Assembly (NCBI RefSeq): GCF_006345805.1
Contig: NC_043025.1
Span: 868,001-932,000, forward strand
Origin: Octopus sinensis
Lineage: Eukaryota
Length of the DNA: 64,000 bases
Reading direction: 5' to 3'
Below, in pieces: positions 14,508 through 39,396 of this stretch. The notes beneath the pieces are model-generated. The model ran no database searches, was not told the DNA's origin, and was given only the letters and a program-made list of their open reading frames with translations. Each line of letters starts with the position of its first letter. The first letter of the stretch is position 1. The translations under genes and the position numbers were made by a program.

Positions 14508-15220
14508 GTAAGTATTTCCTGGCAATGGAACAGATAAACCAGTACATTTTCTATTTTGTATATAATCATATTTATATGTTTATTTCGTTTTAATTCTACC
14601 AATACATTATACTGTCGCTTGTGTTTTTGACAAAGGCCACACAATAAACAATATGCAGTTCTCAGGAGATCAAAGAAAGAACACGATTTTGATTACATTC
14701 CCATGATTCGTAGTGTTGACATTTATACTTCACTGTTCACCCCCAACCTACCCCTCTTCGTTCCCTATTTTAAAGATTTGTGATCAATAGGAAAATATAG
14801 ATCTAAATAATGAAGTGAATGAATTCCATTTTGAAACTGTTACTTAGAAATAAGTGGAATTTATCTGTCTACCAACATCTTTTTCTCACTCTTCTAAGTC
14901 CGAATCAGTCAATATTACGAATGATTTCATAGAAAAATAACCTACAAACACACACCAACAGTGTATATATTATATTTCTGCAAATACTGATGGAATATTG
15001 CCACATATCTTCATAGAAAAAAAAGCTGTCAGGAAACGTAAATAATTCAAGTAACACATATACCATTACTAGGTGTTTTAGTCGCCTTTCACTCCCGTAT
15101 TTTATAAGATTTGGCAATTTCTTTGCCATACATCTCTCTGCATTAGCTACTTAAGAAGCAGACACATTTCCCCCTCAGCGAATATACAAAACTTTCTTTG
15201 TCTGTTGAAATTCATATATC

Positions 15221-15417
15221 ACTCTTTTACTTGACCGCGGCCATGCTGGAGCACTGCCTTTAGTCGATAAAATCGACCCCAGAACTTATTCTTTGTAAGC
15301 CTAGTACTTATTTGCCGAAACGCTAGATTACGGGAATGTAAACACACCAACATCGGTTGTGAAGCGATGGTGGAGGGACAAACACAGACAGACAAATACA
15401 CACACAAACACACAACA

Positions 15418-15468
<51 letters not shown>

Positions 15469-15629
15469 ACGGGCTCCTTTCAGTTTCCCTCTACCAAATC
15501 CACTCAAAAAGCATTGGTCAGTCCGAAGCTATAGTATAAGTCACTTGCCCAAAATGCCACGCAGTGGGACTGAACCCAGAACCATGTGGTTGGTAAGCAA
15601 GCTACTTACCACACATCTACTCCTGCGCC
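15221..15629 (-). mobile_element. tRNA-derived SINE (family B) with internal CA/TA microsatellite, near full length
   Basis: Minus-strand head ggcgcaggagtagatgtgtggtaagtagcttg...gggttcagtccc with A/B boxes. Other copies at ~8245-8510, 30761-31202, 31423-31812, ~37680-37830 and ~41885-42370. Confidence 0.85.
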
Positions 15630-15777
15630 TATTGTTCATAGATATTTATTTTTGGATTGCATAAATATTGATCTGTTTTCTTCAATTGACAAGCCTCAGA
15701 AGATTTTCTCTACTTTTACAAATGATCGTTTTTGTGAATGTTGTTATCATAATAATAATAATAATAATAATAATAAT

Positions 15778-15873
<96 letters not shown>

Positions 15874-15959
15874 AAGAAGCCTATAGAGCGCAGGTGATAT
15901 TATTGGAAAGGGGCAAAATAAGGGACAGAAAACTAGAACTACATGCACGATACATATTA

Positions 15960-16340
15960 TAAAGCCTCCCAAAATCATGGTGGAAAATATCTCATCAGCA
16001 TTGCCCAAATGATGTTGGCATCAGCTTTAAGATATACCCAAGGCCTGGGCCCCGTATTATCTGTCCACAACATAAATCAAACTCGCATCACATAACAACA
16101 ATACGGCAAAATTATTTCACCTCAAGTGGCCCCACTCCATTTAGCATGACACCAAAATACATTAAAGCAGAAAAAGACCCCCATAAAGTTCAAGAAGTAT
16201 TTTCAAATATCCTTCAAGAAATCCCGGATAAAACTCCAACACCAGGAAATGTCCCCGTAAACATCAACTCTCTCCTCGAGTGGGTCATATTGTCCGCATC
16301 CTGATTCACCCGGTAGTGGGATTACGTTAAACATGACCTG
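15960..16340 (+). mobile_element. Degenerate CR1/L2-like LINE 3' fragment, downstream of (AAT)n at ~15750-15870
   Basis: Frameshifted peptide pieces SGPTPFSMTPKYIKAEKDPHKF / ILQEIPDKTPTPGNVPVNINSLLEW match the typical CR1-group ORF2 C-terminal pattern. Confidence 0.55.
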
Positions 16341-16367
16341 CGCTAATACTGGCCCAAACCTATCATG

Positions 16368-16429
<62 letters not shown>

Positions 16430-16435
16430 AGATAT

Positions 16436-16468
<33 letters not shown>

Positions 16469-17171
16469 GTTTAACATCCGTTTTCCGTGCTAGCATGGGT
16501 TGGACGAAAATATATATATAAGTAATATTCGTAGGCACGCCAACATGAGTATCTGTCCGAATAGACTCTACTGCGAATGTTTAACCCCAAGAGAACAACT
16601 CCTCTAGCTAATTAACGATGCAGCGGTGCATCCGATTAATTGCGAGCAGGGGATCGAACCCCTACCATCTTATAGCAACAGGACCAGCAGACCAGGTCTG
16701 ATTTCAGGCTATTCCTGCCACTGCTCAGTACTGGACACCTCATCTGCTAATCTGTGGAGACAGGATGTATATAATAAAGTGTATATAATAAAGTATGTGT
16801 ATATAAAGAAATCTGTGTAGATATATTTGTTCAGAAGAAATGAGTTCGATGTTAGAAGTGAAATATATTTCTGGAATATATGCAGTTCACTGTGTGTCAA
16901 CCAATTTCTATGATGTATCAGGGTCAAGACAAACCTTTATCAATGTATGTATGCATGTGTGTGTATACTTGTATGTGTGTGTGTGTGTGTGTTTCTGCGT
17001 CATTTAACTACACAAAATGCTGTATCTATGTAATTGTTTAAAGAAGAGTTTCTGCTCTACTCTTGGTAGTTACTGATGTATCTTATAATATTCTCTATTC
17101 CGAACATGTAAATAATGTAATATTTGTTATAAATGAATGTTATTGATTGGATATTTCTGTTTTGTCCACAG

Positions 17172-17314
17172 ATGTTTGCGCTGCAGAAATAAAGCGGCCG
17201 CAACAAAAGTCCATCCATGTGGACACCTTGTAATATGTAAGGGATGTTCAAACGTTCCTCTTCAACAATGTCTGAAGTGCTTAAAACCTGTAATAACAAG
17301 CAGAGGTCGAGTTG
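17172..17314 (+). CDS. ANK-RING-death-domain gene, C3HC4 RING exon
   Basis: gtccacag|A...G|gtaag, phase 2 to 1. Reads CLRCRNKAAATKVHPCGHLVICKGCSNVPLQQCLKCLKPVITSRGRV with C-x2-C...C-x-H...C-x2-C...C-x2-C spacing. Confidence 0.93.
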
Positions 17315-18406
17315 GTAAGAATATTCTTTGCTGATCTGTCTGTTTGTCCTGCTTGTCCCATTGCCCTTATTGTGTAGAATAATATACTTCATGTTGTTAT
17401 GTAGACAGAGGTCTGCCATAATCTGGCAGATTTATGATAAAAGGTGTTCCTAGTGTCTGTTCTCTGTAATAGTATATCTCTCACACTACATCCACTAAAC
17501 ATTGACCTTATCCAAGTAGGAAACATGTCACACTTCAAGAAGGTTGTAGTCTGCAACGTAAAGATAATGGACGATTCTGCAAGATAATTAGTGAGTAACT
17601 GAAGTATCAATAAATCTCCATCAACACTATAATTAATTATGAGTTGTTAGAAGATAATTAAATACAACAGTACTTACAAGGACATCAGTGTCATCTTTGG
17701 CAAAGTATTAAATTCAGTAGAATATTTTAAAGGAGTAAAATTATATGTCACTAGTTTGAGACCTTTAACACACAATTCCATGTTGTTATGTTTGTAATTG
17801 GAGGATCTTAAGGCTAATAGAGACAGTTTTGTTTGTCAACCAACCAGATCATGAAACCTTCAAATATATCCTGAATAAGATGACATTCTGGTGAACTGTG
17901 AAGTTAAAATTAAAGATTATCAGCAACAATGTTTAACAAAGAGATTAGGTGTATATTTCTCCTTCTTGAAGTGGTTGTGACATGTATTTGTTGTTATATC
18001 TTTGATGAATAAATATGTTGACACTGGAATCAAACAGGTTGTTAGTGAAGATTAGAGTTTTGAGAATACATTTAGGGTCATAGATATAAGCAAGGAAACC
18101 AAAACCTACAGATAAACTGTTATTAGGTGATAATTAAGTGATATAATTACAGCATTGTTAGATTATGTAGGATATCTTAACAGAGAGAGGAAATTTACAA
18201 AGATCAACTAGAGTTCGTTTTGGAGCTAAATATTGGCTATTACATGGGTCCACTGTTGAAAGTATAAAAATATTGACCAAAAGCATTATGATCGCTGGTT
18301 GGCCATTGATGGTATGAATGTCTCTCAATAATAAAATATAGATTATTAATAAATATAAAGGGATTGTGCTATAAATAAATATAAAACTTGGAGACACATA
18401 TTTCAG

Positions 18407-18457
18407 AGAGTCCAAAGTTTGAAGAGAAGGGAGTGCAGACTGTGGCAGAGACAGTTG
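18407..18457 (+). pseudogene. Duplicated exon copy 1 (paralog of the first death-domain exon) with a mutated donor
   Basis: Intact acceptor atttcag| and a 51-nt frame ESPKFEEKGVQTVAETV, but the donor reads G|atgagt where paralogs have G|gtgagt. Confidence 0.7.
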
Positions 18458-20127
18458 ATGAGTTTAAAATTAGAGATCTTAATTAATTTCTATAGATTTT
18501 ACATTCACCTCAGCTATTTTGCGTATTAGAATGGTGGAGAACAAATCCCATCTCTAATTTCCATTTGAAAGGTTAGCTCTAAAGTAATTGTATTAAAAAT
18601 ATTATTGAAATTTCATAAAGTCATGGTTAACATGTTTGGTCAAATGGATAAATTAAAAGCCACAATAGAGTTAATATTGTCTTCTGGAAGAGGGAACTAT
18701 AATTTTTTTTTTAGGTGTTAACTCGTGAGTTAATAAGATAGTTGTTTGTTTTTCTACTAAGATTTTTCGTAAGTTTTCTGATAGGTTATTCTTGATGTTG
18801 TTATGTCGCCAGATGTCTGTCGTAATATGTTGTATTTTCTGAGGTTGTGTACCCTCAATGTCTCTGGTTAGAATACATTTTGTAGTTGCAAATTAGAAAA
18901 TTATAATTAAATGTTAACTCTGTATAAGAATATTCATCATGAACTTAATTTTATTAAATGTTAAATTTAGTATTGAACCGTGAATATCTGTTTATATTTA
19001 AACAAATTATTGGTGTTTATACAAAATATACAATCAGAAATTGAATTTGACTTGAATACACAAATCCTTGTTTGTAACTATATATAATATACACTTATTA
19101 CATTGTTTGAACAACATTTACCATCCATATAGTCATTCTTTTTCTCACTCTTGTTAGATTTTAGATGATATTAATGCTAAAAGAGGCACAGTTTTCTGAG
19201 TGTTTCACCCTTTGGTCTTGATTGTTGCGTTCAAATTATTTAATGAAAGTTAGTCATTGTTATTTGAACAGGAAATGAATTAATCATTAGTATTTGGCAG
19301 TGGACTTGGTTATATCTTTCTTCGTTTGCTCATGGAACTACCATAATATTAGCTGTGCTGAGACACAATCATATTCATTGTAATGAAGGCTATATGTTCT
19401 TTACTCAGATTATATACAATCTATATTGATATCTAGTATTGCACTGTCAAGCACAGTGCCATTGTATCACATATGTACCCAATTATCATGATAATTAATA
19501 AGCTATAATTCATTAACTCTCTTACATTTGTATGTCTGAAATGTAAACATATTTTGTGATAGGGACATCGTGTACCCTCACCTAACATTTTATATCTTGT
19601 TAGGGATCATGGTGGGGAAGGGTGTATGGTTTTGGTTGTGGAGATGGTTTTTAGGGGACAGATTGTGTGCGGGGTGGAGGGTATGCACATAAAGGACATG
19701 TCTTTATGGGCTCAGTTTTACTTAATTAGAGAGGAATGTTGATTAGTGAATTCTAGAGATGAGAGGACTGTGCCATGCCATAGATTGGCACAGTTATAAG
19801 AAAAGAAAGACAAGCTAAGAGAAAACTGTTATCAAGTGTTAATTAAATGAGATAATTGGTACACATTGTTAGAATATTTAATGTGTTTCTAGAGAGAGAG
19901 AGAGGAGAGGGGGATTTAGAAATGTTAGTCTCTTTTTATTGTGGACATATTGGCTATTACATGGGACCACTGTAGAAAGTACAGAAATATTGACCAAAAC
20001 CATAATGGTCAACATTTGACCAGTAACAACACAATTGAATGTCTCACAATAACAAGATAGAGATTAATAAAAATAAAGATACAGACATTTTATTATCAAA
20101 TGTAAAACTTGGAAATATTTATTTCAG

Positions 20128-20205
20128 GGGCTCCAAAGTCTGAAGACAGGTGTGTAAAAAAAGAGGCTACATGTCAGGAATTAGGGGCTGCATCTCAGGC
20201 AATTG
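20128..20205 (+). CDS. Duplicated exon copy 2, an intact phase 1-1 linker exon
   Basis: atttcag|GG...G|gtgagt, 78 nt, no stop; reads GAPKSEDRCVKKEATCQELGAASQAI. Confidence 0.7.
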
Positions 20206-20455
20206 GTGAGTATAAAATAATAGTTCCCAATTGATTTCTGTAAGGTTTTCTTCCCCCGAGTATATTGTGCTTGAAAGAATAACTGAAAACAGCTTCCATT
20301 CCTATTTTCCAATTGAACAATTATCTGTATAATAATTGAATTAAAGATATCGATTTACTGTGAGTTTATGAAATACCCATTGAGGTTAATGCTGTTGGTA
20401 ATAATGTTCAAATTAGAAGACACAATAGAGTTAATTTTGTCATTTGGTCACAGAA

Positions 20456-21291
20456 CGCATCATCATCATCATCATCACCATCATCATTTAACATCCGTTT
20501 CTTATGGTGGCATGGGTCGGACGATTTCACTGGCAAGGCAGTAGGCTGCGTCAGGCTGCAATGTGATCTGGCAAGGTTTCCACATATGTATGCCATTCCT
20601 AACGCCAACCACTCCGAGAGTGGGTGGGTGCTTTTTACGTGCCACCGACACAGGAGCAGTTGAAGTTGGGGCTGGCATCGACCACGTTCGGAAGGTGCTT
20701 TTTACGTGCCAACCGGCACAGGGAACAGTTGGGCGGCACTGGCAACAAACAATGTTTGAATGGTACTTATTATGTGCCACCGGCACGGGTGCCAGCCAGG
20801 CGGCACTGGCATCGGCCATAATTACAATTTGCATTTGATTTCGATCTTGATTTGATTTGATTGTGATTTCTGGTTTTTGGTTTTACTTGACTCAGAAATT
20901 CTTCTCAAGCGCAACTTATCACTCTGTGATTCAAGGGTACTTTTAAAAGGGGCTTGTTATGCGACACGTATAGGCTACAGCTGTGTGATCTCACTTCACT
21001 TGCCGGGTCCTTAATCACGTCATATTTCCAGAGGTCTCTGTCTCTTACCATTACCTCTGTGAGGCCCAACGTTTGAAGGTCGTTTCACCATGTCATCCCC
21101 TGTCTTCCTGGGTCACCCCTTTCCACGGGTTCGTTCCACTGTTAGGGTGCAACACTTCTTCCCACAGCTCTCCTCATCCATACCATGACCATACCAGTGC
21201 AGTTGTCTCTCTTGTACACCACATCTGATGCTTCTTATGTCTAACACTTCTCTCAGGCCTCTTCACTCTGCCTTGTGTGCACACTGACATC
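20456..21291 (-). mobile_element. 5'-truncated RTE-clade LINE 3' end with (GAT)n tail
   Basis: Minus-strand peptide LREVLDIRSIRCGVQERQLHWYGH..EESCGKKC..RGKG*PRKT (RTE C-terminal R.WYGH / RGRPRKTW pattern), followed by the 3' UTR and tail. Confidence 0.85.
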
Positions 21292-22344
21292 GTTGCGTTC
21301 AAATTATTTAATGGAAGTTAGTCATTGTTATTTGACCAGGAAATGAATTAATCATTAGTATTTGGCAGTGGACTTGGTTATATCTTTCTTCGTTTGCTCA
21401 TGGAACTACCATAATATTAGCTGTGCTGAGACACAATCATATTCATAGTAATGAAGGTTATATGTTCTTTACTCAGATTATATACAATCTATATTGATAT
21501 CTAATAATGACCGAGAACAGGTTCCAATGCTAGATTTCATTTGAATGCTTAGCTATAAAGAAATTCTGTTCTTCTACAACAACACAAATATCCAATAAAT
21601 GTACTTTATGCAAACATCAGTTACTCATTCACTCGCAGAAAGAAAGATACAAAAATTAAATATAAACCCTGAAACGGTTCTCTCCCGTTAAGGAGAATAT
21701 TCGCCCTGTTTGTCATCTCATTGTACTCATTCATTTTCTCTCCGTCTTTTCAAGAAAGATGCTGGTTAAAAGTTTCAATACAATAAATGATATCATCCTC
21801 ATCTTTTCTCATCTGCTCTCCATGCTCCCATACACTAGGTGGGTCATCACTGTCCAAGTCAGTTGTATCTGAAATTACTGCCAACCGTCATTTGTTGAGG
21901 AAAACATCTCACTTAAACATTGCAGCTTTTCTAAGGTGGTAGACCCTTTCTAACCCCAACCACTTTATAAAAGGTCCTGGGTATATTTTATTGTCGCACA
22001 AGCATTAGAAATGATCATCAATTTCCCAACAATATCAAACGTTCCTTTCTACTTGTGGTGTCATCTTTCCTAGTTTCCACCAACCACTTCCTAGTGTGTT
22101 CTGGGAGCATTTAATTATAGCACAAGTAGTAATCAAGTTGTGTTACATTCTACATAATTAGACGGTCCTCACTACTCTATGATGTTTTGGTTCACTGAAG
22201 CTGATGACATTTTCAGGAGGTGAGAAGGGAATGTGATGACAAAAGAATCAGGATGCGGGGAGAGAAATTTGCAATACCCCTCTCCCGGCTGTGGGGTCTT
22301 TGTCTTACATGTCTTTTGGCTAAATATGCCAGTACTTGTGCTTT

Positions 22345-22533
22345 ACACAAAGGGGCCACGTACACTCTGTGAGGTGGTTGGCATCAATAAGAACATCCTA
22401 CCGTAGAAAACCATGCCAAAGAAACCATCTGGGGCCTGGTGCAGTTGTCTGGCTTGTCAGATCCTGTCAAGATTTCCAACCCATTCCAGCATGGAAAACA
22501 AACTTTGAATGTTGATGATGATGATGATGATGT
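22345..22533 (+). mobile_element. RTE-type 3' tail fragment ending in (GAT)n
   Basis: ccaacccattccagcatggaaaac...gatgatgatg matches the tails of the RTE copies elsewhere in the window. Confidence 0.7.
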
Positions 22534-23432
22534 CTTCCAGTAACTCATCATAATTCTTTGTCTTAGATTGTTACCGTAGTTTCCTGTCTGGTATAACATA
22601 TTAGCTCAGTATAATAATATCGATTGTGGAAACCGGTTCAGTGATTTTGATAACATTCATATTGAACAGAGAACATATGTTCACATTTGAACAAAACATT
22701 GATGCTAGCATATGCAATACATGGAAAGGAATGAACGTATGAGATTCCAGTGTGACTTGAACTCACAACTCTTTTCTAACTATAAATATATAATTATCGC
22801 CTGTTACGATGTTTGAATAACGTTTACTGTCCATATAGACATCGTTATACTGACAATTGTTGGCTTTGAGATGGTTTCAATTGTAAGAGAGTCACTGTTT
22901 TCAGTCTTCCACATTTTGGTTTTACTTCCGACTTGATTGTTCTGTTGAAATTAGATCATGGAACCTGGTCATTGTTATTTGACCAAGAAAAGAATTCATC
23001 ATTAGTATTCGGTACTGGAAATGGTTACATTTTTCTATGGTTTCTCATGGAACTACCATAATATCAACTGTGCTGAGACACAACCATATTCATTGTAACA
23101 AATGTCACATGTTCTTCACACAGATTTTATACAATCTATATTGATAGTTAGTGTTTAAACGCCGCATTAACATGATAATTAATCAGCTATCATTCATTAA
23201 CTCTCTTAAACTTGTCTGTCTGGAAGTTTCATAGCATTATCTTGTACCCTCATCTGATATTTTACACCTTGTTACCCTCAAAGTTAACATAACTTTTACA
23301 TGGGTACACAACACATCCCTACGAACTAGTTTTTACAGCTGTATGCCCTTCCCACAATAATAAAGTGTTGATTATCAATAACTATAATGAAATTATACTA
23401 TAAAACGTAAAACTTGAAAATATTCATTTCAA

Positions 23433-23480
23433 AGACTCCAACTTCTGTGAAGGATGCCTTGACAACATCACAGCCAGTTG
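23433..23480 (+). pseudogene. Duplicated exon copy 3 with a mutated acceptor
   Basis: The acceptor reads atttcaa| (AG to AA) and the donor G|gtgaga is intact; 48-nt frame ETPTSVKDALTTSQPV. Using the AG 2 nt downstream gives 46 nt and a frameshift. Confidence 0.65.
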
Positions 23481-24339
23481 GTGAGAAGCAAATAACAGTA
23501 CCTCATGGATTTCTATAAATTTAACCTTCACCTGAGCATTTGTAGTTTATCAGAATGACTGAGGACAAGATCCATTCCTAATTTACATCTGAAATATTAG
23601 CTGTATAATAATTCTATTAGACATTTTGATATCAATGGAATTTCACAAAATATCCAACGGGGTTGGCATGGTTCGGAAAATGGATAATTTAGAAGACAAT
23701 AGAATTAATACTGTATTTTGAAACGGAGGACTAAAATATGTAGTTACTAAGTTTACTGATAGGTTATTGCTGTTGTTGCTATTTAGGCAAATATCTCTCA
23801 TAATGTGACAGATTTACAATGAAATGTGTTCCGTATGTGAACACCCTGCCTTTTTGTTTTCACTGATAAAAATTATCATTACATCCCCTAAACATTGTCT
23901 TTATCCATGTAAAAGCATTAGGTTTGATGCTGAGACAACCGTTTTCTCTCTCCCTCTCTCTCCAAGATAGACACTGATGACCCTCATCATTTATCATCTG
24001 ATGTCTATGCTCCTATCGATTGGATGGATGATTCCTATCCATGTCAGTTCTTATTAACAAATACTGTCCGCCTTGATTGGATGAGGAACACATTCCGGCT
24101 TTTCTATGGTGATGTGCCTTTCCTAACATCAACCACTTTAAAAAGGGCCTTGGGCACAATTTTGCTCCAAAAGCCCTAGAAAAATGATCATGTCGTCAAC
24201 AAAATTAAACGCTCCTCTTTAACTTCTACAAGGAAATTCTGTTTGCAGATACTGAGAACAGAAAGCTAAAATACAATAAAGATGAACTGGATGGATATAT
24301 GCAGGAGATCCAAAGCAAAAGCAATGATTCCCATTCATA

Positions 24340-25110
24340 GACAGTTTGAAATGTCCATTGAAACCAGCAATCAAATACCGATTGATTAGTTCAGACTAAT
24401 TTCAACCTTGAATATTGATGGCAAGATTTATAAGGTTGTATTCACAAAGAGATCAACTGTAAATCTACAGAATAATGAATATGGAACTAAAAGTATCTCG
24501 AAGACTGGAATCCTCTGGCATTCCTGGCTGTGTGGAACATGTGTCTTAAATCTAGGATGTGATACAAGACGGAAAGAAGAATAAAAGGGATTGAATGTTG
24601 TGTGATTTGATCTGGTTTATGGTTCTCTAGCAAACAAATTGTTGATGGAAGCAGTGGACCTGTTTTATATATGAGAAAAGATTAAGGATCTGATGAGGAG
24701 CTGCTATAACAATTTCAATATGCAGTTCTTGAGGAAAACTTTCTCGGCAGACTGGTATCATTTTGAAGCAGGAATTGCTGTAGTTTCTACAATATCAGTC
24801 ATTTGGTTTGTGATTGTTATGGAGATGTTACTTAAATCAGCAGATTGATAAGAAATGGCTCAAAGGAAAACACTCGAGAAGACATTAATGGATTACATAA
24901 CAATAGTAACAACAAATAAAAGGATATGCAAATAGTTCTGGATTAACTGGGTAGACTGAGGAACTTGGTGAAGAATGTGGTTCAATGCAAATGAGTAATG
25001 CAGCCCGTCATTTGTGAAAGGTCAGCAGAAACAAGTGAAGGTCAAAATAGCAGGAGAAACCCTGATGAAGTTTAAAGGAAAACTTGAAAAACTATTACGA
25101 CGATGGTACA
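24340..25110 (+). mobile_element. Highly degenerate reverse-transcriptase fragment of an RLE-type LINE (HERO/NeSL-like)
   Basis: Remnant motifs across stops and frameshifts: ISTLNIDGKIY, GIPGCVEHV, DLVYGS, WYHFEAGIAV..TISVIWFVIVMEMLLKSAD, LMDYITIV. Confidence 0.6.
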
Positions 25111-25978
25111 CTACCTAATTTTGCAATAAGAGTAAAGGCATTGAGATCAAGTCACAGAACGAAGATGGTTAAAAGAAACAAATATGCCAAACATTCTGGA
25201 AAATAAAGATTTGGAGCTCGCACTTTGTATTCCCGTCTTTCTTATATATTTTTGAGTATCAGTCCTTTTGTACCATTTCAGATGTCTTCACTGCAATAAT
25301 GTGTAGATGTCCAGTTGTATGTAGTGAATGGGGTTTTGTGCAAGTGTACATTGTTTTAGGACACCTGATATCACTTTTTGTGTCATCTTTGGAGAACTGA
25401 TCATTGCTCACCTTATTAAGGAGTCTTAAAATATTCCCTGCACCAGATAATGACCAGGTGAACTGGGATGTGGGATGATAAATTCAAGATTTCCAACAGC
25501 AAAGAGAACAGGTATTACGTTTATTTTACTTGAAGTGGGTGTGTCATGCAATTGTGACGAGATCTTTGGAGACCACATTGGATGATATTGGACTTTAGCA
25601 GAAGATGAGGAGAATGGTGGTTAGTGAAGTGTAGAGTTCAGAGGACAGTCACATGTCATAGATTTGGTACAGATATATGAAAGGAGAGAGAGAACTATGA
25701 AATGATAATTGAATGAAATAATTGCAACATTGTTAGATTATGTAGGATGTCTCTGTTAAAGAGAAACAAGGTTTCGGAAAGTTAGTCTATTTTGTTGCGG
25801 GCCTAAATATTGAGCTATTACCTGGTCCCACAATGGAAAGTATAAAAATACTGAGCAAAACCCTAGTGGTTACCAGCCAACCACTGATGATAACAATGTC
25901 CAACAATAAACTACAGAATATTTATAGAGATAAATAAGTTTTACAATAAATTATAAAAGCTGGAAATATTTATTTCAG

Positions 25979-26050
25979 AGAGTCCAGTTCTGAAGGAGAA
26001 AGATCTTCTGAGAGTGGCTAAGAGGTTAGGACGTGATTGGTGGCAAATAG
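25979..26050 (+). CDS. Duplicated exon copy 4: N-terminal death-domain exon
   Basis: atttcag|AG...G|gtgagt, 72 nt, phase 1-1. Reads ESPVLKEKDLLRVAKRLGRDWWQI (death-domain helix 1-2 motif VA..LG.DW). Confidence 0.9.
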
Positions 26051-26639
26051 GTGAGTATATTTGATTTCTATATATTTTACTTTCACCTGATCTATTTTAT
26101 TTGTCAGAATGAATGAGAACAAGTTACATTCCTCATTTCCAATTGATAGGTTATCTGTATGACAATTTTATTTACGATATTCCTGATATTTCATAAAATA
26201 TCCACTGAGGTTAGCATGGTTGGTAATAATGGATAAACTAGAAACACAAATGGCGTTTAATATTATCTTTTGGAAGAGGGAACTAAAATATATGTTTAAG
26301 GGTAAACAGGTGAGTGAATTTGTTTCACATTTTCTTTAGGTTCACTGTTAGGTTATTGTAATGAAGGACAAGTACCAAAGTTAACATCTAAAACAAAGCA
26401 TCTTTCTTCAACAGATTATTTATTGGGTTATTGTGTTGGAAGCTGATAATTCCAATTTATTTTGCCATTTTGCAATGACTTTACCACATGACATATGTCT
26501 AAATGCTTCAATAAAAGAGATTTAATAAAGGTGACACAGCGAAATCCTATCATTCTCCTCAGGCGAAAACAGAGAATTCCTTTAAGGGAATTTACCAGAA
26601 AATGAACATTCACAAGTCAAGCCGAACTGCAGGGGGCAT

Positions 26640-27250
26640 CTCTCATTGAGACTGACATAATAATAACTGAATAGGCTCTGTAGAATTGATCGAACCTGGA
26701 GTTCATTGGAGAAGTTTGAAATGGGATTGAGTTTGACTTAGAATTATCGACTGTTGGACAATCACTGATCATTCGATTTCCAGTGTCCTCTTGGGAACTT
26801 TGCAAGGTAGTAGATGACACAGAGGGACAGTACTTTCATGACCCTTTGAATACCAGTTCTAAATCTAACAGAATATGACAGATGTATGGGGTTCTTCTAG
26901 GGTCTTTGGAGTAATGTTACTCAATAGGATTTACAGTTCAGAGATCTGGGAGTCTCTCCAAGTTGAACCACATCTCCTCCACATCTGTGGTACCTCGGAC
27001 ATGTGATCAGGGTGTTGCAGGAATGAATTACAGGACAGGTTCTCAAAGTCAAACCAATGGAACAGGGTACCGAGGGGGAGGCCAAGAAAGAAATGGTTGG
27101 ATGATATCCATAGTCTTAGTTCTTCACATCATAGAATACAAGCAGAATGTCTAATGATGGATGCTTCTGATAGGACCCTATGGAGGAGGTGCCTGAGGAC
27201 TCTTTCCCCACAGCCCTTTCAAGAATATTGAGCAGAGGAAATGGATGGAT
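26640..27250 (+). mobile_element. Old RTE-like LINE C-terminal fragment
   Basis: Remnants WYLGHVIRV and G.RPRKKWLDDI across frameshifts. Confidence 0.5.
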
Positions 27251-27580
27251 CATATGCTTTCACTGTTGGAGGTCAATGTTAATTCTTGAGGTTCTGATAT
27301 ACTTTTGCCTTCACAAAAGTTTTCCTGCCCTCGTTTACCATATATTTCTCAAGTATAATTTTCAATTAATTTTCTTTAAAAATCTCGTTTAATTCAAACT
27401 CTTTGTTATTTTTGTCAATAGAAAACAATGTCTATATTTTTCCTGTTTCTTAGCTATTTCTTTTTTTACTTCTCTATTGATAAAGTTTGTTTGTTATATT
27501 CATAACAACCTACAGTACACAGCGTTTTATGTTATTGTCAATGTTGTTGCATTCATTTCTTATTGTTGTGTCTTTTGCAG

Positions 27581-27780
27581 TTATTGTTTTAGAAGTTGAT
27601 ACAACTAAACTGAAAATTGATGATGAGTCTAATGTCACTGTAAAACAAGGCTACATGATTCTTTACGAATGGTTCAAAAATTGCGACCCAGAAACACGGA
27701 CACACGCAACATTACGTGCAGCTCTTGAAGAAGCTGAATGTTTCGCTGCGATGGAATGTCTGTCATTAGACGCAAAGTGA
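27581..27780 (+). CDS. ANK-RING-death-domain gene, terminal exon (rest of the death domain plus stop)
   Basis: tcttttgcag|TT, phase 1. Reads (V)IVLEVDTTKLKIDDESNVTVKQGYMILYEWFKNCDPETRTHATLRAALEEAECFAAMECLSLDAK*, with the typical Q...ML..W and T...L..AL death-domain motifs. AATAAA at 28023-28028 is a candidate polyA signal. Confidence 0.9.
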
Positions 27781-29424
27781 ATTTCTGTGTAACTGTTGTT
27801 GTTTAGCCTCAGATTAACCTTGACCAAACAGAGACTTATGATCAAACGCATTCCAGTCAGGACCATCATGCCTATTTCCAAAGAGAACCCACAACCACAT
27901 TGTCCAATATGCCCTTCTGTACAGTGATATCGTGTGAATTTAGCTGCTAATTCTAGCAGGTATATCAGCCACATAGTGATCCCTTCACTGGTTTGGCTCC
28001 TTTGTTAAAAATTCACATTTAAAATAAAGACAAACTTTGAAATGTTCATTTATTGTTGTTGCTGTTGTTGTATATCTAACCCCCCCCTAAGCAACCCCAT
28101 TGTTATATAGACAGCTTTAATATCTTCTGCTATATTGATAGCTATCTACCTTCATGTTTATCTGAGAGTAGAATGCCTGGTATATATATATATTGATGCC
28201 TTTTCCCTTTATATATCCTATAGAGATAGTATTTCTATATAATACATGATGTATCTAAGGATATATCTCACTTTGTCCTGTTGTGGTTTAAGACAGGCCT
28301 CTCCAAAGTGGTGGTGGTTGAATAAAAAATCAGGGGGTTTTGAGTGCAATATACAATATTTTAATTTTATATTCTTACTTTATGACCTTCGTTATTTACT
28401 AATGACTGCAATTTCCGTCAGTAAAAATAAAACTTCACTATTATACATATGAAAATAAATCAAAAAAATTATAATTAAACAATAGCTGTGCTGAAAAAGT
28501 CTGAGATAATAAAATAATGACACAACATTTGTTGTTTTAATTGCATGTGTCTCCCTCTTTTTAAATAACTTCAGATAAAGGAAGAGTACAATTCTTCCCT
28601 ACAATATTTACCTTCATATTACTCCACTGTTATTTTAATTTGAAATTAGATTTCAAGTTCTTACAGCAGAGACCAAGATTAAATAAGTAAAACACATGAG
28701 ACCTTTATGTACATTATAAGATGTGACAGGAAGCTCTACCGAGCAGACTTTTGTGGAATTGGAAAGGAAGATTCATAAGTATTCTCCACTTTTTATTGGA
28801 TTCTTTTGTGATAGAAGTGAACAAACCTGATTGTTTTCAAATTAAATAATCAAGATATTTAAATTAGATAAAAAGAAACTTTATTCAGAAATTGATAATT
28901 ACTATTAAAGCAAAACGAAATTTTACCGGTGAGTGTGTTAATAATAAGGCACTAAAAGAGAATGACTCTCCCCAGACACAACAAAATTATTTTGTATCAA
29001 ACTTTGTACAAAATTATTCTAAATAAATTGATAACATAAGTTTCTGATTTTTTGCTTGGATAACTGGGGGAGAAATTCTATTCACACATTATATGCCATG
29101 TAATACACAACAAAATAATAAGGCTGTTCAAAGCTATAGGTTACTGTTTATATAGACCAGCTGGAGCAAATTTAGTTTAACATTTAATGCGTAACAATAA
29201 ACTCATTTATAAAAGTGTTAGTTTTCTATAAAGTGAGAAAACGTAAGACTTTTAGTGACTTTATAAAACTAAAAAGAGTAACTTCAAACTTTGATGACCC
29301 CAGACAAATTCCTTTACTGACTGAGATCTTCATCTTGTTCTGGTCAATGACTGTCAAAGTAATTTTCATATTTTAAAAGCATCAAAAGAAAAATTGTTGC
29401 CTAGAGAAGAGAGGTTGAATTTGT

Positions 29425-29850
29425 CATCCGACTCGTAGCCGATGCCAGCACCGCCTGTTGGCTTCCGTGCCGGTGGCACATAAAATACACCAATCCGACC
29501 GTGGCCGTTGCCAGCCTCGCCTGGCACCTGTGCAGGTGGCACGTAAAAAGCCACTACACTCACGGAGTGGTGGCGTTAGGAAGGGCATCCAGCTGTAGAA
29601 ACACTGCCAGATAAGACTGGAGCCTGGTGCAGCCTTCTGGCTTCCCAGATCCCCGGTCGAACTGTCCAACCCATGCTAGCATGGAGAACGGACGTTAAAC
29701 GACGATGATGATGATAAAGCACAGAGAATAATGATGGACTGGACATTTCTTTAGATTAATGATCAGAGGATCCCTAAACAGATGATATATGCTAAACTTC
29801 TTTATGGAAAGAGCCCCCAGCAGAAACGAAGACTACGATTTAAGGACTGT
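29425..29850 (+). mobile_element. RTE 3' UTR/tail copy (to ~29715) followed by a separate BovB-like RTE coding fragment
   Basis: The tail ends cggacgttaaacgacgatgatgatgat and is near-identical to 39105-39396. The fragment after it reads INDQRIPKQMIYAKLLYGKSPQQKRRLRFKDC. Confidence 0.75.
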
Positions 29851-36319: not shown

Positions 36320-37420
36320 GGTTGCAAGTACAATAAAAATAAGAAAAAAGTGGGGAATTTTACCGGTTAGTGTGTTATATTATAACATCCGAAGGGATGA
36401 AAGGCAAAATCGACCTCGGCGGAATTTGAACTCAGAACGTAACGGCAGACGAAATACCTATTTCTTTTACTACCCACAGGGGCTAAACACAGAGAGGACA
36501 AACAAGGACAGACAAACGGATTTAAGTCGTCTAATCGACCCCAGTGCGTAATGTGGTACTTATTTAATGGACCCCGAAAGAATGAAAAGCAAGTCGACCT
36601 CGGCGGAATTTGAACTCAGAACGTAACGGCAGACGAAATACCTATTTCTTACTACCACAGGGGCTAAACACAGACGGGACAAACAAGGACAGACAAACGG
36701 ATTAAGTCGACTATATCGACCCCAGTGCGTAACTGGTACTTATTTAATGGACCCCGAAAGGATGAAAGGCAAAGTCGACCTCGGCGGAATTTGAACTCAG
36801 AACGTAACGGCAGACGAAATACCTATTTCTTTACTACCCATAAGGGGATAAACACAGACGGACAAACAAGGACAGACAAACGGATTAAGTCGACTATATC
36901 GACCCCAGTGCGTAACTGGTACTTATTTAATGGACCCCGAAAGGATGAAAGGCAAAGTCGACCTCGGCGGAATTTGAACTCAGAACGTAACGGCAGACGA
37001 AATACCTATTTCTTTACTACCCACAAGGGGCTAAACACAGAGAGGACAAACAAGGACAGACAAACGGATTAAGTCGTCTGTATCGACCCCAGTGCGTAAC
37101 TGGTACTTATTTAATGGACCCCGAAAGGATGAAAGGCAAAGTCGACCTCGGCGGAATTTGAACTCAGAACCTAACGGCAGACGAAATACCTATTTCTTTA
37201 CTACCCACAAGGGGCTAAACACAGAGAGGACAAACAAGGACAGACAAACGGATTAAGTCGTCTGTATCGACCCCAGTGCGTAACTGGTACTTATTTAATG
37301 GACCCCGAAAGGATGAAAGGCAAAGTCGACCTCGGCGGAATTTGAACCCAGAACGTAAAGGCAGACGAAATACTGCTAAGCATTTCGCCCGGCGTGCAAA
37401 CGTTTCTGCCAGCTCGCGCC
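36320..37420 (-). repeat. SINE-derived tandem array, ~184-bp unit, six copies of the anchor motif
   Basis: cgacctcggcggaatttgaa recurs at 36411, 36595, 36776, 36959, 37143 and 37327. Only the last unit carries the intact SINE head (to ~37420). Confidence 0.9.
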
Positions 37421-38236: not shown

Positions 38237-39000
38237 CATCATCGTTTAACGTCAGTTTTCCATGCTAGCATGGGTTGGTGACGGTTCGACCGTCGTCTGG
38301 AAGCCAGGAGGCTGCACCAGGCTCCAATCTGATCAGGTATTGTCTCTACAGCTGGATGCCCTTCCTAACGCCAACCACTCTGAGTTTAGAGGGCGCTTCT
38401 TTCGTGCCACCAGCACAGGTACCCCAGGAGGCTGGCAATGGCCACAATCGGTTGTTGCTTTTTATGTGCCCCCAGCACGGAAGCCAGTCAAGACGGCGGT
38501 GGCATCAGCCTCGTTGAGATGGTGTTTGTATGTGCCACTGGCACGGGTATCACAACTACAATTTCCATTTGATCTTATTTCGATGTTGATGTACTTGACT
38601 CAGTAGGTCTCCTCAAGCACAGCAGGTAACCCTACGATCCAAGGTAAGCACAGTAGGCCGTCCTGCGATCCAAGGTATTTTCGATGGGTTGGGGCTGTTA
38701 TGTGAAGCTGGTGCAGGGAAACAGCCTCACGTTATTTGTCGTGTCTTCGCTGTCACAGCATATCTCCAGAGGTCTCGGTCTTTCGTCATTGCCTCTGTGA
38801 GGCCCAACGCTCGAAGTCAAGCTTGATCACCTCATTCCATGTCTTCCTAGGTCTACTTCTACCCCGGATTCCTTCAACTGTTTGGGAGTGGCACTTCTTC
38901 GCACATCTCTCCTCATCCATCCGGAGTACATGACTATACCAGCGCAAACTTCTTTCTTGCATGCCACATCCGATGCTTGTTATGTCCAGCATTTCTCTCA
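38236..39000 (-). mobile_element. 5'-truncated RTE LINE 3' end
   Basis: ORF 38786-39001 contains LRWYSHVLRMDEERCAKKC...RGRSRPRKTW, followed by the 3' UTR and (GAT)n tail. Confidence 0.85.
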
Positions 39001-39034
39001 TATATATATATATTTTATATATATATTATATATA

Positions 39035-39396
39035 TTCAATTCGAATCGAAATCCAATTGAACCAGCCAGGACCCCTGGTCTGGTGGTACGTAAAAAGCAC
39101 TATCCGACTCGTGGCCGATGCCAGCACCGCCTCGACTGGCTTCCGTGCCGGTGGCACGTAAAATGCACCAATCCGACCGTGGCCGTTGCCACTCTCGCCT
39201 GGCACATGTGCAGGTGGCACGTAAAAAGCACCTACTACACTCACGGAGTGGTTGGCGTTAGGAAGGGCATCCAGCTGTAGAAACATTGCTAGATAAGACT
39301 GGAGCCTGGTGCAGCCTTCTGGCTTCCCAGATCCCCGGTCGAACCGTCCAACCCATGCTAGCATGGAGAAGAATGACATTAAACAATGATGATGAT
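39035..39396 (+). mobile_element. RTE 3' UTR/tail copy in the opposite orientation
   Basis: Same 3' UTR family, ending cccatgctagcatgga...gatgatgat. Confidence 0.8.

What the first reader, a model, noticed from the sequence alone, without database searches (positions are those of the whole stretch)
17780..26400. Four-fold tandem duplication of the first death-domain exon creates a cassette of symmetric micro-exons between RING and death domain
Seen: four paralogous intron-exon-intron blocks (~18150-18800, ~19845-20450, ~23340-23790, ~25730-26360), with further shared flanking segments (19224/21292/22965; ~21700/~23880). Each contains a phase 1-1 exon of 51, 78, 48 or 72 nt after the same ...atttca(g)| acceptor context. 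Peptides ESPKFEEK.., GAPKSEDR.., ETPTSVKD.. and ESPVLKEK..VAKRLGRDWWQI share the N-terminal pattern, but only copy 4 keeps the death-domain helix. All lengths are multiples of 3 and stop-free. Inference: exon duplication is manufacturing a variable-length linker, or alternative death-domain N-termini, that can be included or skipped without frameshift - a small combinatorial-splicing system in a putative immune signalling gene.
Basis: partly seen in the sequence, partly recalled or inferred. Interest (0 to 1): 0.8.

Follow-up and report, generated by a model that had tools for sequence, protein, structure and literature searches.

The report
Duplicated death-domain exon cassettes in octopus
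An octopus ankyrin-RING-death-domain gene carries four old tandem copies of its first death-domain exon; in this locus only one extra copy still looks spliceable, adding a floppy in-frame spacer, which is a tidy but ordinary example of exon duplication.

Summary
The four paralogous intron-exon-intron blocks are real. They share 66-73% identity over about 600 bp and occur nowhere else in the window. The stated exon lengths (51, 78, 48, 72 nt), the 1-1 phase and the open frames all check out.

The "same acceptor" claim does not hold. Copy 1 has ATGAGT instead of GTGAGT at the donor. Copy 3 has TTTCAA instead of TTTCAG at the acceptor. Both lesions are shared with the closest Octopus vulgaris and O. 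sinensis loci. Neither copy is used in any gene model at those loci, and no copy-3-like peptide occurs in any of the 91 family proteins collected. Only copy 2 (20128-20205) and the true death-domain exon 1 (copy 4) keep canonical splice sites.

Octopus Ank-RING-death genes carry 0 to about 7 such cassettes. Annotated isoforms in three species differ by exactly whole cassettes. The copy-2 unit is present 1, 2, 3 and 3 times in four near-identical loci. AlphaFold predicts the cassettes as disordered. They show no sign of purifying selection.

Verdict: a variable-length disordered spacer made by tandem exon duplication, and a new member of a known kind. Separately, the spliceable exons diverge about twice as fast as the introns, which I could not explain.

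The parts
2255..2412 (+). Ankyrin-repeat exon of the host gene. The gene probably starts upstream of the window.
   Evidence: tblastn of family proteins; Pfam Ank E=3e-13; donor GG|gtaagt.
12505..12717 (+). Ankyrin-repeat exon
   Evidence: tblastn, 73-87% identity to O. sinensis models.
14332..14508 (+). Ankyrin/linker exon
   Evidence: tblastn, up to 93% identity; acceptor tag|, donor CAG|gtaagt.
17172..17314 (+). RING (C3HC4) exon. It ends with one base of a split codon, i.e. phase 1.
   Evidence: Pfam zf-C3HC4_3 E=3.6e-5; tblastn; acceptor cag|, donor G|gtaaga.
18114..18800 (+). Repeat copy 1 (block). Its flanks are closest to those of copy 4.
   Evidence: blastn 70.5% to copy 4 over 628 nt, E=1e-71; flank tree.
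18407..18457 (+). Copy-1 pseudo-exon, 51 nt, ESPKFEEKGVQTVAETV. The acceptor is intact; the donor is mutated (ATGAGT).
   Evidence: The same lesion and an identical 51 nt are found in O. sinensis L003 and O. vulgaris L005. Not used by models P0026, P0025 or P0081.
19221..19441 (+). Start (repeat D1) of the ~2.07-kb copy-2 duplication unit
   Evidence: Three copies at 19221/21289/22936. The unit spacing of 2068 nt equals the spacing of copy-2 exons in L001 and L003.
19823..20447 (+). Repeat copy 2 (block)
20128..20205 (+). Copy-2 cassette exon, 78 nt, GAPKSEDRCVKKEATCQELGAASQAI, with canonical cag| and |gtgagt. It is the only extra copy likely to be spliced.
   Evidence: The same exon type is included in models P0081, P0026, P0001/2, P0020-22 and P0028. 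Predicted disordered, pLDDT 32-37.
20455..21290 (+). Dispersed-repeat (transposon-like) fragment carried inside the copy-2 unit
   Evidence: Copies at 29467-29715, 38237-39396 and 45368-45737 in the window.
21289..21509 (+). Remnant start of a second copy-2 unit (97% identical to 19221-19441), truncated. Related loci have 2-3 full units here.
23350..23790 (+). Repeat copy 3 (block, 5' part shortened)
23433..23480 (+). Copy-3 pseudo-exon, 48 nt, ETPTSVKDALTTSQPV. The acceptor is mutated (TTTCAA); the donor is intact.
   Evidence: The same CAA occurs in L001, L002 and L003. No copy-3-like peptide in any of 91 family proteins. Use of the AG at +2 gives a stop codon.
25689..26319 (+). Repeat copy 4 (block)
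25979..26050 (+). Death-domain exon 1, 72 nt, ESPVLKEKDLLRVAKRLGRDWWQI. It encodes helix 1 and the start of helix 2.
   Evidence: Canonical sites; aligns to PIDD and FADD death domains; helix 80-101 in the model.
27581..27780 (+). Last exon: the rest of the death domain plus the TGA stop
   Evidence: tblastn up to 95% identity; AlphaFold pLDDT 84-93.

Best explanation
The window holds one member of an Octopus-specific family of ankyrin-RING-death-domain proteins. The databases call them 'MIB2-like'.

Origin (shown). The intron between the RING exon and the death domain contains an array made by repeated tandem duplication of a segment carrying death-domain exon 1 and its splice sites. That exon is phase 1-1 and its copies stayed multiples of three, so any copy that keeps both splice sites is spliced in as an in-frame cassette.

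What the cassettes do (inferred). Each adds 16-26 residues of intrinsically disordered spacer between the E3 RING and the death domain. Skipping a cassette gives shorter isoforms.

How copy number changes (inferred from the locus comparison). Unequal crossing-over between units keeps changing the number. The 2.07-kb copy-2 unit occurs 1 time plus a remnant here, and 2, 3 and 3 times in three loci that are 96-99% identical.

State of this locus (splice sites shown, transcripts inferred). The array is mostly decayed. Copy 1 lost its donor (G to A at +1) and copy 3 lost its acceptor (G to A at -1). Both changes predate the O. vulgaris / O. sinensis split. The expected transcripts are RING-c2-c4-last and RING-c4-last, possibly with rare skipping of c4. 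The path RING-c2-c4 is inferred from the annotated model at the collinear O. vulgaris locus, not from transcripts of this locus.
For: - Four blocks, found only here.
- Homologous acceptors and donors in all copies.
- Splice-site lesions shared across loci.
- The collinear O. vulgaris locus L005 has the model P0081 = RING -> c2-type -> c4. The collinear O. sinensis locus L003 has P0026 = RING -> c2 -> c2 -> c4 -> last.
- Isoform sets differ by whole cassettes: O. sinensis XP_029656669/XP_036355654/XP_036355655 and XP_029656895-7; O. bimaculoides XP_014776758/763/764 and XP_014768682/XP_052833829.
- Alternative forms in the O. vulgaris annotation were added by PASA from Iso-Seq and RNA-seq assemblies (PMC10700109).
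- Relatives carry 0 to about 7 cassettes.
- Cassettes are predicted disordered: pLDDT 32-37 for c2 and 25-29 for a four-cassette array.
- The death fold is confirmed. The top four Foldseek hits are death domains, including RIPK1 at TM 0.70. Pfam Death scores 40-45 bits in relatives.
- Copy 2 shares the raised divergence of the spliceable exons, while copies 1 and 3 do not.
Against: - No transcript data for this locus were available. Inclusion of copy 2 rests on gene models at other loci, several of which are visibly imperfect (read-through tails such as GEYI and GEYKIIVPN).
- The cassette peptides show no purifying selection. Exon identity is at or below flank identity, and pN/pS is about 0.6-1.
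- One annotated cassette (ARPIFEDK... in L003, model P0025) has a CTGAGT donor in the assembly. So an assembly-level splice-site lesion does not always stop an exon being annotated.
Confidence: 0.72

Rival explanations
1. All three extra copies, including copy 2, are neutral intronic relics. Their appearance in gene models is an artefact of predictors that accept any in-frame ORF with splice-like borders.
For: There is no purifying selection on the cassette peptides. They are predicted disordered. Several models are clearly faulty. Many family models join RING directly to the last exon or to death-domain exon 1.
Against: Cassette-specific isoform sets appear in three independently annotated species. 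PASA transcript-based alternative forms were used for O. vulgaris. All seven genomic copy-2-type exons examined keep CAG/GTGAGT and an open 78-nt frame. Arrays of exactly 17-aa units persist in O. bimaculoides as well as in O. sinensis.
Confidence: 0.1
2. One reading: all four copies are live cassette exons, and combinatorial inclusion gives up to 16 in-frame isoforms at this locus.
For: All four are multiples of three and stop-free in frame. Copies 1 and 3 have not decayed: 0/99 differences vs L005 and 2/99 vs L003. One annotated cassette elsewhere has a non-GT donor in the assembly.
Against: Copy 1's donor is ATGAGT, which is not a U12 AT-AC consensus either. Copy 3's acceptor is CAA. Both states are fixed in every locus examined. 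Neither copy is used in models at the collinear loci, and no copy-3 peptide occurs in any of 91 family proteins or in the final database search.
Confidence: 0.05
3. Copies 1 and 3 are kept as 'poison' or terminal exons. Using copy 1's acceptor without a donor ends the protein at ...AETVDEFKIRDLN*. Using copy 3's AG at +2 puts a stop at the copy-3/copy-4 junction. Either route gives an Ank-RING protein without a death domain, or a transcript destined for decay. That would be a way to switch off death-domain coupling.
For: The frames were worked out. O. sinensis model P0016 enters a copy-1-type exon and runs on into the intron. Copies 1 and 3 are slightly more conserved than the surrounding non-coding DNA vs L005 (0/99 against 3.1%).
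Against: P0016 is a partial model on a 12-kb contig. The conservation signal is marginal: about three differences would be expected by chance, and vs L003 it is 2/99, which is background. ATTAAA/AATAAA hexamers after copy 1 are unremarkable in DNA this AT-rich.
Confidence: 0.1
4. The blocks are copies of a mobile element that happens to carry an exon-like ORF (exonised transposon).
For: The intron is full of dispersed repeats, and the copy-2 unit itself carries one.
Against: The 600-bp block occurs only between the RING and death-domain exons, always in the sense orientation. This holds in the window and in five related loci with 10-kb flanks. It contains a bona fide part of a death domain.
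Confidence: 0.02

Closest known systems
Tandem exon duplication giving alternatively spliced, phase-symmetric exons that encode disordered regions (general principle; Schad, Kalmar & Tompa 2013, PMC3632108; tandem exon duplication surveys such as PMC8373072)
   Same: Adjacent homologous exons with homologous intron flanks. Phase 1-1 symmetry. The product is predicted disordered. Annotated isoforms include or skip the exons.
   Different: The source exon here is not a linker exon. It is the first exon of a folded death domain; the copies lost the helix-forming part and became spacer. Copy number still differs between loci that are 96-99% identical.
Differentially spliced spacer-exon arrays such as the titin PEVK exons (from my own knowledge, not tested here)
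   Same: It works like this: an array of short in-frame exons, made by duplication, whose inclusion sets the length of an unstructured segment.
   Different: The scale is far smaller (0 to about 7 units). No mechanical role is implied, and there is no evidence of regulated tissue-specific inclusion.
Mutually exclusive exon clusters from exon duplication (e.g. Dscam1, ATE1; PMC6071210, PMC7797038)
   Same: Origin by tandem exon duplication. O. sinensis isoforms X6, X7 and X8 each use a different single copy-2-type exon.
   Different: The copies are not exclusive. Two or three occur together with copy 4 in P0001, P0002, P0026 and P0028. They do not replace an equivalent part of a fold.
Mind bomb 2 (MIB2) E3 ligase, the name given by the databases
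   Same: Ankyrin repeats followed by a C-terminal C3HC4 RING of the zf-C3HC4_3 type.
   Different: Full-length relatives show no MIB/HERC2 or ZZ domain hits. The family has a C-terminal death domain, which as far as I know MIB2 lacks.
Mollusc RING + death-domain proteins: oyster IAPs with BIR-DD-RING architecture (PMC8917759)
   Same: Lineage-specific expanded families in molluscs that combine a death domain with an E3 RING.
   Different: Different order (here RING comes before the death domain) and different partner domains (ankyrin, not BIR). No cassette array is reported there.

Membership tests
Tandemly duplicated exons | Neighbouring copies in one gene, on the same strand, with homology extending into both flanking introns | tested here: met
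   Four blocks of about 600 bp. Flanks are 67-72% identical, and acceptor and donor positions are homologous.
Tandemly duplicated exons | Same intron phase on both sides, with lengths that keep the frame | tested here: met
   51, 78, 48 and 72 nt, all phase 1-1. Every combination stays in frame.
Cassette (skippable) exon | Canonical AG acceptor and GT donor | tested here: inconclusive
   Met for copy 2 and copy 4. Not met for copy 1 (donor AT) or copy 3 (acceptor AA).
Cassette (skippable) exon | Transcripts both with and without the exon | not testable with these tools
   There are no RNA data for this locus. Indirect evidence: annotated isoform sets at paralogous loci differ by whole cassettes.
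Mutually exclusive exon cluster | Exactly one copy per transcript, with copies interchangeable within the fold | tested here: not met
   Two or three cassettes plus copy 4 occur together in P0001, P0002, P0026, P0028 and P0044. The cassettes lack the LG.DW motif.
Death domain (Pfam PF00531) | Sequence match above Pfam's gathering score | tested here: inconclusive
   The window's own sequence scores 13.6 bits against a cut-off of 22.6. Homologues of the same family score 39.6-45.1 bits.
Death domain (Pfam PF00531) | Death-fold helical bundle | tested here: met
   AlphaFold pLDDT 84-93 over the domain. The top four Foldseek PDB hits are death domains (p84, FADD, RIPK1 at TM 0.70 / 3.0 A, TNFR1) with prob 0.9-1.0, though E is only 0.2-0.95.
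Mind bomb 2 (MIB2) | MIB/HERC2 and ZZ domains N-terminal to the ankyrin repeats | tested here: not met
   Pfam scans of full-length relatives (P0044 545 aa, P0056, P0071) give only Ank, RING and Death. The window's own N-terminus lies outside the window.
Exonised transposable element | Copies dispersed at unrelated sites | tested here: not met
   No copies outside the RING-to-death-domain intron in the window or in five related loci.

The most novel reading that the evidence does not exclude
The Octopus Ank-RING-death family may be a deliberately fast-diversifying system. Its spliceable coding exons, including the live cassette, differ between 96-99%-identical loci about 2-2.4 times more than the introns do. 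This holds at synonymous as well as non-synonymous sites and at non-CpG sites. The splice-dead copies sit at or below the intron rate. On top of that come cassette copy-number turnover and exchange of the whole 3' module between paralogues. Together these could reflect exon-targeted diversification (short-tract gene conversion or selection) of a signalling adaptor whose spacer length and sequence are tuned by splicing. A technical cause has not been excluded: assembly polishing with mis-mapped reads from many paralogues would also inflate exon differences.
Probability: 0.12. Interest if true: 0.65.

Novelty: new member of a known kind. Interest (0 to 1): 0.35.

Why it matters
This is a clear, datable example of part of a folded domain being recycled into a disordered spacer. 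A death-domain helix exon is duplicated, loses its helix motif, and becomes a spacer whose length then varies by unequal crossing-over and exon skipping. It also shows that in-frame, stop-free duplicated exons can be splice-dead. Counting such copies as isoform capacity overstates diversity: here four candidates reduce to one live cassette. For octopus biology it flags a large, rapidly changing Ank-RING-death family whose 'MIB2-like' label is misleading and which may couple ubiquitin ligation to death-domain signalling complexes. None of this is conceptually new.

Tried and rejected
1. New internal donor. From the first alignment I thought the cassettes had gained a new donor inside the ancestral exon. 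Rejected: the window's copy 4 has a 17-nt intronic deletion after GTGAGTATA, and with L004's copy 4 as a guide all donors line up as homologous.
2. U12-type AT-AC splicing for copy 1. The donor ATGAGT lacks the ATATCC consensus (read directly from the sequence).
3. Transposon origin of the blocks. No dispersed copies.
4. CpG decay as the cause of the faster exon divergence. The excess persists at non-CpG sites.
5. Exon-specific gene conversion. Four-gamete incompatibilities are as frequent in the intron (65/171) as in the exons (21/66), so the test does not discriminate.
6. Look-ups of the loci for P0020, P0023 and P0028 failed, because only the longest product of each gene is indexed.
7. The last protein search, using an all-inclusive c1+c2+c3+c4 query, found no model with a spliced copy-1 or copy-3 junction. 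This is weak negative evidence only.
8. Literature searches found no paper on this octopus family.


Full report
**What the sequence is**

The window is AT-rich eukaryotic DNA. Conceptual translation of the exons flanking the finding finds only Octopus proteins (O. vulgaris, O. sinensis, O. bimaculoides), annotated 'E3 ubiquitin-protein ligase MIB2-like' or 'uncharacterized'.

One gene of this family lies on the + strand. Its exons are:

| Exon | Coordinates |
|---|---|
| Ankyrin | ~2255-2412 |
| Ankyrin | 12505-12717 |
| Ankyrin/linker | 14332-14508 |
| RING | 17172-17314 |
| Last exon | 27581-27780 |

The four repeat copies lie between the RING exon and the last exon.

In the 3' region the window is 98.2-98.8% identical (substitutions only) to two O. 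vulgaris loci, L001 and L005. All three are about 96.8% identical to O. sinensis L003. The window is therefore most likely a member of a young tandem paralogue cluster in the O. vulgaris lineage. No annotated protein is identical to its product.

**Checking the observation**

The four blocks are real. Pairwise blastn gives 66-73% identity over 390-640 nt, with E from 1e-23 to 1e-72, and there are no other copies in the 64 kb. The extra shared segments exist too: 19221/21289/22936 and 21797-22046 ~ 23982-24216. Exon lengths, phase and peptides are as stated, and every combination stays in frame.

The splice sites are not all alike:

| Copy | Acceptor | Donor |
|---|---|---|
| 1 | cag\| | TTG\|ATGAGT (not GT) |
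| 2 | cag\| | \|gtgagt |
| 3 | tttcaa\| (not AG) | \|gtgaga |
| 4 | cag\| | \|gtgagt |

For copy 1, the nearby GTs would give 46- or 56-nt exons that shift the frame. For copy 3, the AG 2 nt downstream gives a 46-nt exon and a TGA at the junction with copy 4.

**Related loci**

I fetched five family loci.

- **L003** (O. sinensis chromosome CM016885.1) is collinear with the window from 10993 to 29426.
- **L005** (O. vulgaris) is collinear with the window from about 1.8 to 34 kb.
- **Copy 1** in both L003 and L005 has an identical 51-nt exon and the same ATGAGT.
- **Copy 3** has the same CAA acceptor in L001, L002 and L003; L005 also has a copy-3 block.
- **Use in models.** Neither copy 1 nor copy 3 is used by the models at these loci. 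P0081 reads RING -> copy-2 type -> copy 4. P0026 reads RING -> c2 -> c2 -> c4 -> last.
- **Copy-3 peptide.** No copy-3-like peptide occurs in any of the 91 family proteins collected. A final search with an all-inclusive query found none either.
- **Copy 2.** All seven genomic copy-2-type exons examined keep CAG/GTGAGT and an open 78-nt frame.

**Family-level picture**

The cassettes are a long-standing feature of the family. Models carry from none to about seven units between RING and death domain:

| Model | Cassettes |
|---|---|
| P0063 | none |
| P0044 | four 17-18-aa units |
| P0051 | five 17-aa units plus a degenerate 24-aa copy of death-domain exon 1 |
| P0071 | six 17-aa units |
| P0053 | four 26-aa units |

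P0045 contains KNPNFEEKQRETMAKRV, which is intermediate between a cassette and helix 1 (EKDLLRVAKRL). That supports derivation of the cassettes from death-domain exon 1.

Annotated isoform sets differ by exactly whole cassettes:

- O. sinensis LOC115230672 X1/X2/X3: skip of the 17-aa cassette, or skip of death-domain exon 1.
- O. sinensis MIB2-like X6/X7/X8: a different single copy-2-type exon in each.
- O. bimaculoides XP_014776758 / 763 / 764: 5, 4 or 3 cassettes.
- O. bimaculoides XP_014768682.2 vs XP_052833829.1: +/- one cassette.

For O. vulgaris, alternative forms were added by PASA from Iso-Seq and RNA-seq assemblies (PMC10700109). I could not inspect reads myself.

**Age and turnover**

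Intron flanks of the four types differ by 26-31%, against 1-7% between corresponding copies in different loci. The four types are therefore several-fold older than the split of these loci.

The copy-2 unit, in contrast, is young and unstable. It is a 2.07-kb segment that includes a dispersed-repeat fragment. It is present once plus a truncated restart (21289-21509) in the window, twice in L003, and three times in both L001 and L005.

A further 17-aa cassette (ARPIFEDK...) is present in L002, L003 and L005 but absent from the window.

L001 shares the window's 3' module from about 18.9 kb onward at 94-98% identity. Its RING region is only about 65% identical and it has no copy 1. This points to exchange of the 3' module between paralogues.

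**What the cassettes encode**

The death domain is real.

- Pfam Death is sub-threshold for the window's own sequence but scores 40-45 bits in relatives, with the match starting inside the copy-4-type exon.
- phmmer against the PDB finds mainly death domains, weakly.
- An AlphaFold model of RING+c2+c4+last has pLDDT 84-93 over the domain. Its top four PDB matches are death domains, including RIPK1 at TM 0.70 and 3.0 A.

The copy-2 cassette has pLDDT 32-37. A four-cassette array in P0044 has pLDDT 25-29 with no secondary structure. The cassettes therefore look like disordered spacer.

**Selection**

Within the window the exon parts of the copies are less alike (40-59%) than the flanks (67-72%). 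Among copy-2-type copies, exon identity (90-97%) is at or below flank identity (94.5-99%). There is no sign of purifying selection on the peptides.

Unexpectedly, all spliceable exons of the gene diverge faster than the non-coding DNA:

| Comparison | Spliceable exons (diffs/sites) | Non-coding (diffs/sites) | p |
|---|---|---|---|
| Window vs L003 | 58/667 | 570/15127 | 2e-8 |
| Window vs L005 | 55/877 | 448/14606 | 3e-6 |

- The excess holds at non-CpG sites.
- pS is 0.11, pN is 0.08, and pN/pS is 0.77-1.15.
- Copy 2 shares the excess: 7/78 vs L003 and 5/78 vs L005.
- Copies 1 and 3 do not: 2/99 vs L003 and 0/99 vs L005, with p=0.016 and p=0.004 against the spliceable exons.

That contrast fits copy 2 being a live exon and copies 1 and 3 not, but the numbers are small. 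Recombination signals are as common in the intron as in the exons. An assembly-polishing artefact in a multi-copy family cannot be excluded. I leave the cause open.

**Mechanism and verdict**

- **Shown:** tandem duplication of death-domain exon 1; phase symmetry; the splice-site states and their conservation across loci; copy-number differences between near-identical loci; predicted disorder; the death fold.
- **Inferred:** copy 2 is included or skipped in transcripts of this locus; copies 1 and 3 are silent; unequal crossing-over drives the copy-number changes; the spacer tunes how the RING and death domain are coupled.

This fits a known principle: phase-symmetric exons that encode disordered regions often arise by internal tandem duplication and tend to be alternatively spliced (PMC3632108). 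It is not a mutually exclusive exon system, not an exonised transposon, and not a true MIB2 orthologue.

It is a new member of a known kind. The 'four-exon combinatorial system' is overstated for this locus, and the immune role is conjecture.

Noticed in passing
window exons 12505-12717, 14332-14508, 17172-17314, 20128-20205, 25979-26050, 27581-27777 vs L003 and L005: The spliceable coding exons are 2-2.4 times more diverged than the surrounding introns between 96-99%-identical loci. This holds at synonymous, non-synonymous and non-CpG sites, and the 200-nt flanks sit at background level. The cause is unknown. Candidates are short-tract gene conversion, selection, or a polishing artefact in a multi-copy family.
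   Followed up: partly
window ~18700-18923 (boundary) vs L001: From about 18.9 kb onward the window is 94-98% identical to O. vulgaris locus L001. L001's RING-exon region is only about 65% identical and it has no copy 1. The cassette + death-domain 3' module seems to have been exchanged or copied between paralogues with different 5' halves.
   Followed up: partly
window 17172-17314: The RING exon looks mosaic. Its first half (…HPCGHLVICKGC…) matches the O. sinensis X6-X8 gene (P0020-22). Its second half (…QQCLKCLKPVIT.RGRV) matches L003/P0026.
   Followed up: no
L003 20284-20334 and L005 ~51910-51960: The ARPIFEDKEVQTVEEPR cassette has a CTGAGT donor in both of these assemblies but GTGAGT in L002. 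O. sinensis model P0025 (isoform X5) still contains the peptide, which maps at 100% identity to L003. This may be a polymorphism, a paralogue mix-up, or non-canonical splicing.
   Followed up: no
window 3032-7445: A 4.4-kb (GAT)n microsatellite (about 1,470 units, 82% matches) lies inside an intron of the gene. Other long simple repeats: (TCTA)n at 8632-9034, (TTA)n at 52166-53412, (CAA)n at 56730-57482.
   Followed up: no
window 36389-37373: A tandem array of 5.4 copies of a 184-nt unit (95% matches). The nature of the unit was not determined.
   Followed up: no
window 50020-50464 (- strand) and 53623-53856 (- strand): Retroelement debris: reverse-transcriptase fragments (Pfam RVT_1, E=5e-7 and 7e-5) and a weak GIY-YIG nuclease match (E=5e-4).
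   Followed up: partly
window ~1700-1860: A run of N (assembly gap) interrupts the sequence upstream of the first ankyrin exon seen.
   Followed up: no
window 26459-27515 vs L002: About 1 kb of the intron between death-domain exon 1 and the last exon is present in the window, L001, L003 and L005 but absent from O. sinensis L002. This is an insertion/deletion difference between paralogues.
   Followed up: no
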